DNA from: Salpingoeca rosetta
Lineage: Eukaryota; Protista; Choanoflagellata
Direction of reading: 5' to 3'
NCBI GenBank assembly: GCA_033442325.1
Contig: JAWQFM010000016.1
Location: 1,097,679 to 1,161,678 of the forward strand
DNA length: 64,000 nt
The notes under the pieces were generated by a model. The model had not been told where the DNA came from, made no database searches, and worked only from the letters and a program-made list of their open reading frames with translations. The position numbers were made by a program, and so were the translations under genes. Shown here piece by piece: positions 17,704 to 22,504 of this stretch (positions are counted from its first letter, which is position 1; each line of letters starts with the position of its first letter).

Positions 17704-18687
17704 ATGATGGCGACCTTGTTACCGAATGCGGCTGCCAGCCGGCACCACCAGCGCGGCGCTCACGGCCGCGGCACAGCGTCGCGGATAACCTCTGTTGCCA
17801 TTGCTGCCGCTGTGGCTGTGCTTGCGCTCTGCACCCTGCTGGCGCCCGCCCCTGTTGCAGGCAGGCCCCTTACAGTCAACACCAACGTCGCAGCCGCCAT
17901 CAGCGACAACTTCAACACCGTGCATGTGCATGCGCCCACTGATGACCACGCCGCCAGCAGCCGCGATGGCATTGCCCGGCGCAGCGCAGACGACGACGAC
18001 GATGGCGCGTTCATGTTCGCCGGTGCCACGCAAGGCGACGACGACGATGATGGCGCCGCCTCGTGGTATCGCAGCGACTACTTCCAGGTGCTCTTCCCCG
18101 TCCCCAACCCGAGCGAGCTTGTTGAGACAAACACGCAGAAGACGAACATCGTCTCCGAGATTATCCACTACGCCAACACCTTCAACACAAGCGTGCACTA
18201 CTGGGCGCTGAGCGACTACTTTGTGAGCACCTTCAAGGACGGCGGCACGGAGGGCATCCTGTGCTACCTCATCTTTAACACCACCTCGGATCTCCTCGCC
18301 CTTGTCGACGTGGCCGAGATGCACGGCATTGTCGTCCACTTCCGCGGCGTCCCCGTAAACGGCCAGCCCATCCCCGAAGGCATGCAGAACCGGGACTGCG
18401 AGGTGCGTGGCGACTGTGGCTCCGGCTCTTCGCCCGTCGTCATCATCGTGGGTGCCGTTGTCGGCTGCATCGCCCTCGTTGCGCTGGTGGTTGTTGGCGG
18501 CTTCTTCTTCCCCTCGCGCGACGCGGGCAAGGAGGTGGTTCAACGCGATGATGATGATGATGACGACACACAGCAACCCGCTCTGCAACTGCAGCAGTTC
18601 CAGCAACAGACGCCAAAGGACGTTGGCATAACCGCCATTCACCAGTTTGTGCTCCAGGTGCGTTATTATGTGAGTGTGAATGCGTGC

Positions 18688-18728
<41 letters not shown>

Positions 18729-21186
18729 CGTGAAGTAAGCTCTTCTGTTTGTTCCATGACGGGTGTTGTCACATCACACCACACCCCTCGTCTCGCATTG
18801 CGTTCATCCACTCACAAACAACACGTCTCATCATCACCATCACCATTGATCATCATTCCAGAACGATGTCGGCGGATTGGAAGACCATGTTGAGCGCATG
18901 TACAGCGAGGATATGTACGATGTGCGCGAGCTTGTTCCCGGACTGGCGCCAACGGGCCCCTCAGACGGCACCACATACATCCCGCCGGCAGCCACCGCAG
19001 CGACCAGCACCACGGGCAGCTCCTTCACCGTGGGCGATGGCATGATGGACAACGCCATGATGGGCATGGATGTGTCGCAGGGTGGCGAACACAAGGGTGC
19101 GACGAGGCACAGCCCTTCATATCCCTCGTCGTCAGCGTCGTCGCACGTGACAGGCATGGCCGTGTCGCCGGACTCGCAGCTGAGCGAAGCGCACGGCTCA
19201 GACACCACCGCGTCCACCATGTCCTTCCACCAGCACCGCAAATACCACCAGCAGCAACAGCTGCAGCTGCAGCAGCATCAGTACATGGACACCAGCTCGC
19301 AGCACCCGCCATCGTCACACGGGACGCAGGCATCCTCGCCCCAGCACTCGTTTGCTGACTCTGCCAGCACACACGCGCACGCGCACGTGCATGCGCAAGA
19401 CGTGGAGGTGCCCGTGACGCCAGAGCACATTCGCCTGCACCGCGAACAGCAGCAGCAGCAGCACGCAACAAGGGAAGTCAACTTTGGGCTGCCGCCCTTT
19501 GAACAGCCGGTCGGTGTGGACGACGTGGTCAGCGATGAAGCCGTGTTTGCGCTGCCATCAGCGCCCTTCACCCCCTTCCCCATCAGCGATGATGTGCTGG
19601 GAACGCGCCAGCACTACGTCTTCCCCGACGAACAACAGCAACAGCAACAGCACCAGCACCAGCACCAGCAGCAGTCGTGCGCACCTGTGCCGACCACGAT
19701 GAACATGGCTGCCCTGCGCCAAATGCAACAGCACCACGTGCAACAATACCAGCAACAGCAACAGCAGCAGCAGCCACAGCAACAACAACCGCAGATGCAC
19801 ACGCAACAACAGATGGAGGTACAGCAGCCGCCTGCGCACGGGGAGGGCGCGCAACTCCCGCAGGCAACAGACACATGCCCCGTACAGCCCACGCTGTGCG
19901 AGAACCGCGCTGTTGTACCGGCTGTGAAGGAGGAGGAGACGGTCACTGCCGAGAAAGAGACGCCATTGAAGGGCGTATCTGTGCAGTCTGTCGTCAGGGG
20001 CCAGGCGTTTGACAAGTTTTCTAGTCACGCCCGCGCTACACGCGCGTCCATCTCCTTTGCGCAGTCTCCACAGGGGATTCGCATGCGCACACCGCAGCAG
20101 CTGAGTACGTTTCAACGGCAAGAGGAACAAGGGGGCAAGGGGATTGTGTGTATCTTGTGCCGTGTGTGGGTGTGCACATGTGTGCATGACATGCTCCATT
20201 TGCTTGCGCTTTAACTCACACTCACACTCACTTGCCCGCTCACCGACACACACACACATACTCACACACTCACTCACACACACACTCACTCACTCACTCA
20301 CTTACTTACTTACTTACCGTCTGACTCGCCCACTCGCTTGCGACTTCGCGCATTCCGTTTCTGCAGAGGAGTTGAATCAGGCGGACGGCACGGGCATGAC
20401 GCCGATTGCATACGCCGTTCTCTTCCAGTACGTGACCATCCTGCGCTCGCTCGTTGCGCACGGCGCAGACGTCAACAAGAAGGTGAAGACGTGCCACACG
20501 CCGCTGCACCTGGCCACCATGCAGCAGGGCTGCAACCACGCCATTGTCGCCATTCTCCTCGACAACGGCGCAGACCCAAACGCATTTGACGACTCGGTAC
20601 GTCTGGCGCGTGGGTGTTGGGGAGAGGGAGGGGTTCAAGAGCTTGGTTCTTTGTCTCGGGTACTTGGTTTTCTTTGTTGCGTTCGGTCCTTTGCTTGCGC
20701 GTGTGCTTCATGAAGGAGGTGATGTTGCTGGTGGCTGTGTTCGATCGTGTGTGCTTGGTGACACTTGTTCCTTCGACCATATCTCATCTCATCTCATTCC
20801 CCCCCCCTTTCTCAAACACGCACACAACAGCACACCACGCCGCTGGTGTATGCATGCCGCAACCAGGACCACAGCCTGGTGCAGCTGCTGCTGCAGCACC
20901 ATGCAGATGTGACGCTTGCGGATCGCCGTGGGATGACACCACTCATGCACGCGGCGGCACGCGGCAACCTGCCCCTCACCACCGCCATTCTGCAGGCCAA
21001 CCAAGACACCATCACCGCCCAGGACAACAGCAACTGGACAGCGCTGCACTGGGCGGCTGCTGTGAGCGCTGTTGACTGCATGCGAGCGCTGCTGCAGTCG
21101 CAGCGCGTCTCTGTTCTCGCCCTCAACAGCGCCGGGGAATCTCCGCTTCACCTTGCAGCCAAACGCGACGCCCGCGAGGTGCGAAC

Positions 21187-21229
<43 letters not shown>

Positions 21230-21619
21230 GTGCGTCTGTCTGTGTGTCTGTCTGTGTGTCTGTGTCCGTGTGTGTCTGTGTCCGTGTGTGTCTGTGTCTG
21301 TGTGTGTGAACGGTTTCTTTTTCGTTTCTCGTGACGATTCCGCTTCCTTTCCCCTCACTCTCACTCACACTCACCCCTTCCCGTGTTGTCTGGCGGGCTG
21401 CAGATTGTGGATCTGCTGGTGCAACGCATCTCTGAGCAGGACGCCATCAACGCTCTCAAGGCGCGCACACACGCGGGTCAGACGTGCGAGGAGCTGGCAG
21501 AGTCGTGTGGGCAGCTCGGCATGGCAGAGTACCTTGCAGACCTCCTCTTCCGCCTCACAAACAGCGGTCAGTGCGTCGGGTGTGTGTGTGTGTTTTGTGA
21601 GAGAGAGTGTGTGTGTGTG

Positions 21620-21657
<38 letters not shown>

Positions 21658-21837
21658 GACATGATTTGACCAGACTTGCTCATCCAACACCTGCTTTGTT
21701 CCGTTTCGTGCTTCTCACATGCCCACCGTGTTGCATTGCACCCATTGCCTTTGTTGTTGTTGATCGCAGATGCCTCCACCACAGCCACGTCTGAGGTTCG
21801 TTCCGAATGTGTGTGTTTGTGTTTGTGTTTGTGTGTG

Positions 21838-21891
<54 letters not shown>

Positions 21892-22066
21892 GCACGGCTT
21901 GTTGCTGTACATGAAGATAATAAGTCACATGTCTTCGCCGCTTCAACCTCACCGTGCTGTCTTGATCGCTTCCGTTGAATCAACACAGGATGGCGAGAAC
22001 CAGGCCCCCAAGCGCGTCAAGAGGGTGAGTTTGTGCACATGTTTGTACAAGGAGACCCTCATCCAT

Positions 22067-22135
<69 letters not shown>

Positions 22136-22504
22136 CACATGCACACGCACACAACAACAACGCACACAACATCATCATCATCATCATCATCATCATGCCG
22201 TCCCTCACACCAACCCTTCCGCCCCTCCACTCCACTCCTGATTGTAAAACAGGTCAAGTCGACGTCGCAGATGACGCCCGAGGAGCGCAAGAAGCGGGAG
22301 GAGCGACGAGAGGCGCGGCGCGCGTACATGCAGAAGCGACGCAAGGACGAACGCGAAGAGCTTGATAAGCTTGAGACGCGCGTGAGCGAGCTGGAGGAGG
22401 AGAACAAGTCGCTTGATGCCGCGCGGGAGCAGCTGCGACGCGATGCACAGGAACTGCGCGCACTCGCAGACACCAACGCCCACCAGCAGCAGCACATGTT
22501 CTGA
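17704..22504 (+). CDS. Type-I transmembrane protein with Notch-like ankyrin repeats, NLS and C-terminal bZIP-like domain; exons 17704-18657, 18862-20104, 20367-20596, 20831-21178, 21404-21566, 21770-21795, 21989-22024, 22253-22504
   Basis: Seven GT-AG introns, all phase-compatible, give one ORF. Domain order: signal (VAIAAAVAVLALCTLLA), ~130-aa ectodomain, TM (VVIIVGAVVGCIALVALVVVGGFFF), Q/S/H-rich region, ANK repeats (GMTPIAYA, HTPLHLA, TTPLVYA, GMTPLMHA, WTALHWAAAV, GESPLHLA), PKRVKR, then a basic region with 5 heptad leucines. Confidence 0.8.

What the first reader, a model, noticed from the sequence alone, without database searches (positions are those of the whole stretch)
17704..22504. 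Candidate self-contained Notch-like receptor/transcription factor: signal peptide - ectodomain - TM - ankyrin repeats - NLS - bZIP in one polypeptide
Seen: eight exons, which the ORF track shows only as unrelated fragments, splice in phase into a type-I membrane protein. Its cytoplasmic part has a Q/S/H-rich region, about 6-7 ankyrin repeats, the NLS-like PKRVKR and a terminal basic-leucine zipper. Known: the repeat WTALHWAAAVSAVD...GESPLHLAAKRDAREIVDLL closely parallels Notch ANK KSALHWAAAVNNVD...EETPLFLAAREGSYETAKVLL. Notch has no DNA-binding domain and needs CSL. Membrane-tethered bZIPs (ATF6, CREB3, plant bZIP17/28/60) are type II with an N-terminal bZIP and no ankyrins. Inference: regulated intramembrane proteolysis could release an ANK-bZIP fragment that acts directly in the nucleus, a one-component membrane-to-nucleus signalling system in a unicellular relative of animals.
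Basis: partly seen in the sequence, partly recalled or inferred. Interest (0 to 1): 0.9.

Follow-up and report, generated by a model that had tools for sequence, protein, structure and literature searches.

The report
Membrane protein with ankyrin and zipper tail
This is a real, expressed and already annotated gene of the choanoflagellate Salpingoeca rosetta (PTSG_06347) that joins a membrane anchor, seven ordinary ankyrin repeats and a divergent bZIP-like tail in one protein; it is not related to Notch, and its proposed membrane-to-nucleus signalling role is untested.

Summary
Eight GT-AG exons (17704-22504, + strand) splice in phase into a 1083-aa protein. It is letter-for-letter the annotated S. 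rosetta protein PTSG_06347 (XP_004993237.1, UniProt F2UCN0). Spliced RNA contigs from two studies carry all seven junctions. The only unbridged stretch is a polyQ repeat inside exon 2.

The protein has two hydrophobic segments (aa 28-54 and 244-269), a 463-aa Q-rich linker, seven ankyrin repeats and the motif PKRVKR. Its C-terminal 74 residues are predicted as one helix, with a basic stretch and five heptad leucines.

- **Notch kinship: not supported.** Pfam finds only Ank. The repeats match consensus ankyrins best, with no Notch chain in the top 60 PDB matches.
- **bZIP call: inconclusive.** Pfam bZIP_1 scores 12.8 bits against a cut-off of 27.6, and the invariant Asn is Arg1022. However, the basic stretch sits in the canonical register to the zipper (shuffle p about 0.013), and language-model neighbours are bZIP clusters.
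- **Conservation: none found.** Neither the ectodomain nor the tail has a homologue in any search.

Release by intramembrane proteolysis is pure inference. Presenilin, APH-1 and rhomboids are present in the genome. This is a lineage-restricted, testable candidate of moderate interest.

The parts
17373..17703 (+). 5' UTR (minimum extent; true start site unknown)
   Evidence: Spliced contigs X4 record 9 and X7 record 12 are colinear from 17450 and extend about 77 nt further upstream. No ATG occurs in any frame between 17373 and 17703.
17704..18657 (+). Exon 1 (aa 1-318). It encodes an R/H-rich N-terminus; hydrophobic segment aa 28-54 (nt 17785-17865), a signal peptide or signal anchor; an orphan ectodomain aa 55-243 with two poly-Asp runs, sequons N161 and N192, and RGD at aa 235; and the TM helix aa 244-269 (nt 18433-18510).
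   Evidence: Kyte-Doolittle hydropathy, sequons; no homologue of this exon among 1.84 billion representatives except the protein itself; the intron 1 junction is present in RNA contigs.
18862..20104 (+). Exon 2 (aa 319-733). It encodes a Q/S/A/P/H-rich low-complexity cytoplasmic linker, including the polyQ repeat at 19625-19795.
   Evidence: the linker aa 270-732 is 16% Q; no Pfam domain; contigs break only at 19625-19795.
20367..20596 (+). Exon 3: ankyrin repeats 1-2 (aa 739-807).
   Evidence: Pfam Ank E 3.7e-13 and Ank_2 E 2.8e-11. Junctions are in RNA contigs and raw reads.
20831..21178 (+). Exon 4: ankyrin repeats 3-5 and the first half of repeat 6 (aa 808-925).
   Evidence: Pfam Ank_2 E 3.3e-21. 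Whole-protein Ank_2 E 1.3e-44.
21404..21566 (+). Exon 5: the rest of repeat 6 and the degenerate capping repeat 7 (to about aa 975).
   Evidence: Repeat parsing. Pfam finds 6 Ank stretches; the seventh is read by eye. RNA contigs cover 21402-21565.
21770..21795 (+). Exon 6: a 26-nt micro-exon encoding an S/T-rich linker.
   Evidence: Canonical AG/GT borders and correct phase. In both RNA contigs, exactly 62 nt (26+36) lie between exon 5 and exon 8. The 26-nt piece itself was too short to be listed.
21989..22024 (+). Exon 7: a 36-nt micro-exon encoding DGENQAPKRVKR, an NLS-like K-R-x-K-R cluster at aa 995-1000.
   Evidence: X7 record 13 aligns to 21987-22023. The 22023/22252 junction is seen in 13 raw reads.
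22253..22504 (+). Exon 8 (aa 1001-1083 plus stop). It encodes a basic stretch at aa 1010-1034 (nt 22280-22354), then a leucine zipper with d-position leucines at 1040, 1047, 1054, 1061 and 1068 and a-position V1044 and N1051 (nt 22370-22456).
   Evidence: register, PSSM, hhalign; a continuous helix aa 1009-1082 with pLDDT 82-98. Pfam bZIP_1 scores only 12.8 bits.
22505..22847 (+). 3' UTR (minimum extent).
   Evidence: RNA contigs continue to 22846/22847.

Best explanation
PTSG_06347 is a lineage-restricted membrane protein of Salpingoeca rosetta.

Shown: it is one spliced, + strand, moderately expressed mRNA of eight exons. It encodes an N-terminal hydrophobic segment, an orphan domain of about 190 aa, one strong TM helix (aa 244-269), a 463-aa Q-rich disordered linker, seven consensus-type ankyrin repeats, a KR cluster, and a C-terminal 74-residue helix. 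That helix carries a basic stretch immediately followed by a five-heptad leucine zipper.

Inferred topology: the orphan domain faces the lumen or outside, and everything after aa 270 faces the cytoplasm.

Inferred mechanism, my most likely reading: it is a membrane-tethered, latent, bZIP-like regulator. The zipper dimerises. The tail is a divergent bZIP acquired as a self-contained phase-0 exon. The cytoplasmic part must be cut off at or near the type-I-oriented TM helix before it can reach the nucleus; candidate proteases are presenilin/gamma-secretase, rhomboid or a cytosolic protease. The ankyrin repeats serve as a partner-binding module or as an NLS-masking module.

Not shown: whether the tail binds DNA itself. 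With Arg in place of the invariant Asn, any specificity would be non-canonical.
For: Gene and transcript.

The TM-coding part of exon 1 (18174-18535) is covered at 4-6x in raw RNA reads. That is similar to the ANK and zipper exons at 6-12x, so no separate 3' gene is evident.

ANK.

Tail:
- A basic-region matrix was built from 13 canonical S. rosetta bZIPs. It scores best at exactly the offset fixed independently by the zipper (Leu1040 minus 18). The score is 14.6 bits, inside the leave-one-out range of true bZIPs (4.4-40.9), and beats 98.7% of composition-preserving shuffles.
- Arg1030 is kept at the invariant position.
- The a/d pattern L-x3-V-x2-L-x3-N-x2-L matches GCN4 and Jun (own knowledge, and the JunD alignment).
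- 11 of 18 weak PDB hits are bZIPs aligned in register.
- The ESM-feature neighbours are all bZIP clusters (0.88, 173 shared features).
- UniProt names it a BZIP domain-containing protein.
- AlphaFold2 predicts one uninterrupted helix at pLDDT above 90.

Proteases: presenilin, APH-1 and rhomboid genes are in the genome.

Precedent: bZIPs with the conserved Asn replaced are documented in oomycetes (PMC4046829).
Against: Pfam bZIP_1 gives 12.8 bits against a cut-off of 27.6 (E 0.13). The tail is not among the 30 best bZIP_1 loci of the genome.

The best PDB hit is the EEA1 coiled coil.

hhalign against the S. rosetta bZIP profile gives 84%, but a plain coiled-coil control gets 79%. Most of the signal is therefore the zipper.

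Asn is replaced by Arg1022, the Ala-Ala pair by Tyr-Met, and the hinge between basic region and zipper is acidic (KDEREELDK).

No orthologue or paralogue of the ectodomain or the tail exists in any search. There is thus no evolutionary evidence of constraint on the architecture.

ANK plus a C-terminal leucine zipper also occurs in non-DNA-binding proteins such as GABP-beta and MYPT1 (own knowledge).

No data bear on cleavage or localisation. In the one raw-read library, the first 100 nt of the CDS are barely covered.
Confidence: 0.4

Rival explanations
1. It is a membrane-anchored scaffold. The ankyrin repeats and the C-terminal coiled coil are protein-protein interaction modules that work at the membrane, as in ANK plus leucine-zipper proteins such as MYPT1. 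The basic stretch binds acidic lipids or partners. The protein is never cleaved, and the bZIP likeness is coiled-coil and composition noise.
For: Pfam bZIP is below threshold. A coiled-coil control scores almost as well in hhalign. The top PDB hit is a non-bZIP coiled coil. The ANK repeats are generic. The canonical DNA-contact residues Asn and Ala-Ala are missing.
Against: The basic stretch is in the exact bZIP register relative to the zipper, with p about 0.013 against shuffles. Arg1030 and the GCN4/Jun-type a-position Asn are present. Language-model neighbours are uniformly bZIP. A separate K-R-x-K-R cluster lies just upstream.
Confidence: 0.33
2. It is a membrane-tethered decoy. The zipper heterodimerises with soluble S. 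rosetta bZIPs and holds them at the membrane, acting as a dominant-negative sink. The protein neither binds DNA nor is cleaved.
For: It has a bZIP-type zipper with a degraded basic region, Arg for Asn and an acidic hinge. The genome holds 13 canonical bZIP loci as potential partners. Basic-region-defective bZIPs that act as inhibitors are known, for example CHOP (own knowledge).
Against: There is no direct evidence. The closest soluble bZIP (L017) is only 36% identical over the tail, at E 0.66.
Confidence: 0.1
3. It is a young chimeric gene made by exon shuffling (orphan N-terminus, low-complexity linker, ANK exons and a bZIP exon). It is transcribed but has no selected signalling function.
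For: It is a singleton. No homologue of the ectodomain or the tail was found in 1.84-5.8 billion proteins or in its own genome. Almost half of the protein is low-complexity sequence. The zipper module is a self-contained phase-0 exon.
Against: An intact 1083-codon frame runs across eight exons and two micro-exons. Expression is seen in at least three RNA data sets at depths similar to ordinary genes. The ANK repeats are well formed.
Confidence: 0.12
4. It is a Notch homologue or Notch-derived receptor.
Against: Pfam finds no EGF, Notch/LNR or NOD domains. The ectodomain has no homologue at all. No Notch chain is among the 60 best of 446 PDB matches. No Notch is named among the 120 listed ANK hits of the long-protein search. 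It fails the architecture criterion of Richter et al. 2018 (PMC6040629).
Confidence: 0.02
5. The gene model is an artefact: two adjacent genes, a TM protein and an ANK-zipper protein, have been fused by annotation.
For: No single contig bridges 19625-19795. The 3' contig has 1.6-2.4 times the mean depth of the 5' contig in X4 and X7.
Against: The gap lies inside one uninterrupted open frame of 414 codons and coincides with a polyQ repeat where assemblers break. Raw-read depth is similar on both sides: 13 at 19079-19440 and 9.4 at 19803-19983. There is no stop, start context or intergenic sequence between the two parts.
Confidence: 0.03

Closest known systems
ER-membrane-tethered bZIP factors (ATF6, CREB3/OASIS family, plant bZIP17/28/60)
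   Same: A basic-leucine-zipper module tethered to a membrane by one TM helix. The logic is that proteolysis must free it before it can act in the nucleus.
   Different: Those are type II proteins: a cytosolic N-terminal canonical bZIP, then the TM, then a luminal C-terminus. They are cut by S1P/S2P (own knowledge). Here the bZIP-like module is C-terminal to a type-I-oriented TM, falls below the Pfam threshold, lacks the invariant Asn, and is preceded by ankyrin repeats. No sequence homology beyond the weak zipper match was found.
Notch
   Same: An extracellular part, then a TM, then a cytoplasmic ANK block of seven repeats with a nearby basic NLS-like cluster. Presenilin and APH-1 are present in the genome.
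   Different: There are no EGF, LNR/Notch, NOD or RAM modules, and the ectodomain is an orphan. The ANK repeats are consensus-type rather than Notch-type. Notch has no DNA-binding or zipper module.
Yeast Mga2/Spt23 and NF-kB p105/p100
   Same: These are latent transcription regulators that carry ankyrin repeats. Mga2/Spt23 are membrane-tethered and released by processing. In p105/p100 the ANK block masks the NLS (own knowledge).
   Different: Mga2/Spt23 are tail-anchored, with IPT/TIG plus ANK, and are processed by the proteasome. None of these has a zipper. No homology was detected here.
GABP-beta (and MYPT1): ANK repeats plus a C-terminal leucine zipper
   Same: The module order ANK, then NLS/basic stretch, then leucine zipper matches the last 350 residues.
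   Different: Those proteins are soluble and do not bind DNA themselves. They are not among the best PDB matches listed.
Oomycete non-conventional bZIPs
   Same: The conserved basic-region Asn is replaced by another residue while the domain is still treated as bZIP (PMC4046829).
   Different: Those proteins form expanded, conserved families detected by SMART/CDD. The tail here is a singleton.

Membership tests
Ankyrin repeat proteins (Pfam clan Ank) | Score above the curated Pfam cut-off, with several tandem 33-residue repeats | tested here: met
   Ank_2 scores 151 bits (cut-off 27.3) and Ank 100.7 bits with 6 stretches. Seven repeats were parsed at aa 739-980.
bZIP (Pfam PF00170 / PF07716) | Score above the curated Pfam cut-off | tested here: not met
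   bZIP_1 scores 12.8 bits (E 0.13) against a cut-off of 27.6. bZIP_2 is not reported at E<=1. The tail is not among the top 30 bZIP_1 loci of its own genome, 13 of which pass the cut-off.
bZIP | Invariant Asn of the basic-region signature N-x7-R | tested here: not met
   The position fixed by the zipper (Leu1040 minus 18) is Arg1022, and the Ala-Ala pair is Tyr-Met. One of 13 canonical S. rosetta bZIPs (L010) also lacks the Asn, having Ser.
bZIP | Invariant Arg, and fixed spacing (R-x9-L) between the basic region and the first zipper Leu | tested here: met
   Arg1030 sits at Leu1040 minus 10. The basic-region matrix has its best score at exactly this register, 14.6 bits with shuffle p 0.013. 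hhalign uses the same register.
bZIP | Leucine heptad repeat directly continuing the basic helix | tested here: met
   Leucines at 1040, 1047, 1054, 1061 and 1068, with a-position V1044 and N1051. A single helix aa 1009-1082 is predicted at pLDDT 82-98.
bZIP | Profile-level similarity clearly above that of non-bZIP coiled coils | tested here: inconclusive
   hhalign gives probability 84% for the tail, against 79% and 11% for two coiled-coil controls. ESM features give 0.88 with 173 shared features, all neighbours bZIP. The PDB top hit is EEA1 and the following hits are bZIPs.
bZIP | Sequence-specific DNA binding as a dimer | not testable with these tools
   This needs EMSA, PBM or SELEX. The homodimer prediction gave no verdict.
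Notch (architecture criterion of Richter et al. 2018, PMC6040629) | One or more EGF repeats and a Notch/LNR domain N-terminal to the TM | tested here: not met
   The Pfam scan of the whole protein finds only Ank families. Exon 1 has no homologue at all.
Notch | TM followed by an Ank domain | tested here: met
   The TM is at aa 244-269 and the Ank block at aa 739-980. This feature alone is not diagnostic.
Notch | ANK block specifically closer to Notch ANK than to other ANK proteins | tested here: not met
   The top 60 of 446 PDB matches are DARPins, ankyrin-1/2, NompC, TRPA1, latrotoxins, tankyrase and Kidins220. None is a Notch chain.
Type II membrane-tethered bZIPs (ATF6/CREB3/plant bZIP17-28-60) | bZIP N-terminal to a single TM (type II), with a luminal C-terminus | tested here: not met
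   The zipper module is the extreme C-terminus, 730 residues after the TM.
Type I membrane protein / substrate of regulated intramembrane proteolysis | Cleavable signal peptide plus one TM; cleavage within the TM | not testable with these tools
   Only hydropathy was available: segments at aa 28-54 and 244-269, with a small-residue site V-A-G|R at 51-54. SignalP and DeepTMHMM were not available. Presenilin, APH-1 and rhomboid genes are present. The nicastrin search was blank and uninformative.

The most novel reading that the evidence does not exclude
S. rosetta has assembled, by exon shuffling, a one-polypeptide membrane-to-nucleus pathway. In this reading an orphan extracellular sensor domain controls cleavage at a type-I-oriented TM helix by presenilin or rhomboid. 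Cleavage releases a Q-rich, ANK, NLS and bZIP fragment that dimerises and binds DNA directly through a non-canonical (Arg-for-Asn) basic region. This would be a topology and domain order unlike any described membrane-bound transcription factor, arising independently of Notch in the sister group of animals.
Probability: 0.15. Interest if true: 0.7.

Novelty: new variant of a known kind. Interest (0 to 1): 0.4.

Why it matters
Membrane-bound transcription factors are few. The known bZIP examples all share one topology: type II with an N-terminal bZIP. A type-I-oriented protein with a C-terminal ANK and bZIP-like fragment would be a new layout.

It would also be a clean example of how choanoflagellates recombine 'animal' signalling modules into lineage-specific pathways. 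S. rosetta can be transfected and edited, so tagging, inhibitor treatment and DNA-binding assays are feasible.

The impact is limited in three ways. The gene is a singleton with no detectable orthologues. The DNA-binding module is only marginally bZIP-like. And nothing links it by descent to Notch, so it says little about the origin of animal Notch signalling.

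Tried and rejected
- **Ectodomain fold.** AlphaFold2 on aa 115-275 without an alignment gave pLDDT 46.7, which is unusable, so no fold search was run. 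I had suspected a juxtamembrane SEA-like domain from the motif H-G-I-V-V-H. This could not be tested and I make no claim. ESM-feature neighbours of the ectodomain were weak and unnamed (0.77).
- **ANK plus tail fold.** The ANK part was poorly modelled in single-sequence mode (pLDDT 30-45). Only the terminal helix is confident.
- **Homodimer of the tail.** Complex prediction with 2 copies of aa 1001-1083 gave no verdict (score 0.03). It counts neither for nor against dimerisation.
- **Orthologue and paralogue searches.** None found a protein sharing the ectodomain or the tail. The searches were exon 1 against 1.84 billion representatives, the tail region among proteins of 596-1895 aa, ANK plus tail among proteins of 596-1895 aa and 193-614 aa, and a six-frame search of its own genome. 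Tail homologues shorter than 596 aa were only indirectly covered.
- **Literature.** No paper in the library mentions PTSG_06347 or the term combination S. rosetta, bZIP, ankyrin and transmembrane. A 2025 preprint on membrane-bound transcription factors does not cover this protein.
- **Earlier scan notes.** None exist for this place or these words.
- **False joints.** The listed non-GT..AG joints in the read table (for example 18002 to 18546 and 18566 to 19441) carry foreign letters and lie in poly-Asp or polyQ codon repeats. I read them as reads from other loci, not as splicing.
- **Nicastrin.** The Pfam search of the genome was blank but uninformative, because the controls were also blank.

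Full report
**1. The observation**

I rebuilt the gene from the sequence. Eight exons with canonical GT..AG borders join in phase into 3252 nt, or 1083 codons, with no internal stop. The exons are 17704-18657, 18862-20104, 20367-20596, 20831-21178, 21404-21566, 21770-21795, 21989-22024 and 22253-22504.

A search of 1.84 billion protein representatives with exon 1 returned a single hit, a 1083-aa protein (P0001). It is letter-for-letter my model. It is Salpingoeca rosetta PTSG_06347 (EGD74337.1, XP_004993237.1, UniProt F2UCN0), named 'hypothetical protein' by NCBI and 'BZIP domain-containing protein' by UniProt.

**2. Transcript evidence**

- Run X1 is DNA: its contigs run through the splice sites.
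- Runs X4 and X7 come from two different studies and hold only about 0.66-0.69 of the sampled words, which matches the exon fraction of 0.68. They contain spliced contigs.
- One contig pair (X4 record 9, X7 record 12) runs from upstream of 17450 through exon 1, skips intron 1, and continues to 19624.
- The other pair (X4 record 10, X7 record 13) runs 19796-20104, 20367-20595, 20830-21176 and 21402-21565. It then has 62 nt, exactly the length of micro-exons 6 and 7 (26+36); X7 aligns 21987-22023 within it. It ends with 22252-22847.
- Stranded raw reads (X21) lie with the first mate on the minus strand, so the RNA is on the + strand. Depth in introns is about 0-0.2. Junction reads appear for introns 2, 3 and 7.
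- The only unbridged stretch is 19625-19795. This is a polyQ codon repeat inside the uninterrupted frame of exon 2, where the tool skipped repeats and the contigs break.
- Raw-read depth is similar on both sides of that gap, and over the TM-coding part of exon 1 (4-6x) and the ANK and zipper exons (6-12x). I put the chance that this is two genes at about 3%.
- One caveat remains. In X21 the first roughly 100 nt of the CDS and the 5' UTR are covered at only 0.3-0.8x, and GC content does not explain this. Some transcripts may start downstream of the annotated ATG.
- No ATG occurs in the known 5' UTR (17373-17703) in any frame.

**3. Anatomy**

- Two hydrophobic segments stand out by hydropathy: aa 28-54 and aa 244-269.
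- The first follows an R/H-rich stretch of 27 residues (net charge +4) and ends in V-A-G|R. It could be a long signal peptide or an N-in signal anchor. In either case aa 55-243 is luminal or extracellular, and it carries the sequons N161 and N192. Everything after aa 270 is then cytoplasmic. No formal predictor was available.
- The ectodomain has no Pfam domain, no homologue anywhere, no informative language-model neighbour and no usable structure prediction.
- aa 270-732 is low-complexity sequence, 16% Gln.
- aa 739-980 holds six Pfam-detected ankyrin repeats plus a degenerate cap (Ank_2 E 1.3e-44).
- Exon 7 encodes the PKRVKR cluster.
- Exon 8, a self-contained phase-0 exon, encodes a basic stretch followed by leucines at 1040, 1047, 1054, 1061 and 1068, with Val1044 and Asn1051 at a positions.
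- AlphaFold2 models aa 1009-1082 as one continuous helix at pLDDT 82-98, even without an alignment.

**4. Is it Notch-like?**

Only by analogy.

- Pfam sees nothing but Ank.
- The criterion used for choanoflagellate Notch is EGF, then a Notch domain, then TM, then Ank, in that order (Richter et al. 2018, PMC6040629). It fails on the first two.
- The ANK block's best solved relatives are DARPins, ankyrin-1/2, NompC, TRPA1, latrotoxins, tankyrase and Kidins220. No Notch chain is in the top 60 of 446 matches.
- Database hits are generic ANK proteins at 25-40% identity.

**5. Is the tail a bZIP?**

Evidence against:
- Pfam bZIP_1 gives 12.8 bits (E 0.13) against a cut-off of 27.6.
- A genome-wide bZIP_1 scan finds 13 loci over the cut-off, and the tail is not among the best 30.
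- The best PDB hit is a non-bZIP coiled coil, EEA1.
- hhalign against a profile of ten S. rosetta bZIPs gives 84%, but a coiled-coil control gets 79%.
- In the register set by the zipper, the invariant Asn is Arg1022, the Ala-Ala pair is Tyr-Met, and the hinge is acidic.

Evidence for:
- A basic-region matrix built from 13 S. rosetta bZIPs peaks at exactly the offset the zipper dictates. The score is 14.6 bits, within the leave-one-out range of true members, and 1.3% of composition-preserving shuffles reach it.
- Arg1030 is conserved.
- The L-x3-V-x2-L-x3-N-x2-L pattern is that of Jun and GCN4 (alignment; own knowledge).
- 11 of 18 weak PDB hits are bZIPs aligned gaplessly.
- The nearest ESM-feature clusters are all bZIP (0.88, 173 shared features).
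- UniProt's automatic name implies that another bZIP signature fired.
- Asn-substituted bZIPs exist in oomycetes (PMC4046829).

I put about 60% on the tail being a derived bZIP and about 25% on it binding DNA itself.

**6. Conservation**

None was found. Neither the ectodomain nor the tail has a homologue in other organisms or a paralogue in the genome. No ANK hit carries a bZIP domain. The architecture is a singleton, plausibly assembled by exon shuffling. This removes the strongest kind of computational support for function.

**7. Mechanism**

If the tail is a bZIP, a DNA-binding dimerisation module held at a membrane must be released or must act as a sink.

The TM helix is type-I oriented and rich in Gly and beta-branched residues. 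The genome encodes presenilin, APH-1 and several rhomboids; the nicastrin search was uninformative.

I therefore rank the readings as follows:
- membrane-tethered latent bZIP-like regulator: 0.40
- non-nuclear ANK/coiled-coil scaffold: 0.33
- young chimeric gene without a selected signalling role: 0.12
- membrane decoy for soluble bZIPs: 0.10
- annotation fusion: 0.03
- Notch homologue: 0.02

Cleavage, nuclear entry and DNA binding are all inferred, not shown.

**8. Novelty and verdict**

The gene model is public. No paper in the searched library mentions it, and a 2025 survey of membrane-bound transcription regulators does not list it.

As a candidate, it would be a new variant of the membrane-bound transcription-factor theme, with type-I orientation and a C-terminal ANK plus bZIP-like module. 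It is not a new category and not a Notch relative. Interest is moderate (0.4): the gene is attractive and testable in a tractable organism, but it is a singleton with a marginal DNA-binding call.

Noticed in passing
window 17450-17811: In the stranded raw-read RNA run X21, depth is 0.3-0.8 over the 5' UTR and the first roughly 100 nt of the CDS. It is 4-6 further into exon 1, and GC content is similar (0.56-0.66). This may reflect a downstream alternative transcription start or a library bias. The spliced contigs of X4 and X7 do include this stretch.
   Followed up: partly
window 17918-18566 and 19247-19466: Many reads and contigs show non-canonical 'joints' and loose ends with foreign letters at poly-Asp (GAC/GAT) and polyQ (CAG/CAA) codon runs. 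They look like reads from other genes with the same codon repeats, including the apparent T>A at 19262.
   Followed up: no
window 18684-18730, 20220-20320, 21190-21310, 21580-21650, 21810-21890, 22065-22135: Six of the seven introns of this gene carry a GT/CA-type microsatellite or a CTCA/CTTA-type short repeat. The 5' UTR edge (17360-17400) carries a (CA)n-like run too.
   Followed up: no
window 23180-24307 (- strand): The tail-to-tail neighbour is a 375-aa single open frame with a glycosyltransferase DXD sugar-binding region (Pfam Gly_transf_sug, E 8e-24).
   Followed up: partly
window 24956-26683 (+ strand): A 575-aa open frame matches class-II DAHP synthase nearly end to end (PF01474, E 2.7e-178). 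This is the first enzyme of the shikimate pathway, in a close relative of animals.
   Followed up: no
window 29978-31414 (+ strand): An open frame matches dynein heavy chain N-terminal region 1 (PF08385, E 1.7e-22). It is probably one exon of a large dynein gene.
   Followed up: no
L017 (G000:C2:2196635-2196799) and L010 (G000:C7:1216670-1216846): L017 is the canonical S. rosetta bZIP most like the tail (36% identity, also an acidic hinge) and lies in a 1276-aa open frame. L010 passes the Pfam cut-off although its basic-region Asn is Ser, so the Asn is not absolute in this genome.
   Followed up: partly
window 18406-18414 (aa 235-237): An RGD tripeptide flanked by two cysteines (C-E-V-R-G-D-C) sits nine residues before the TM helix. 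It may be chance.
   Followed up: no
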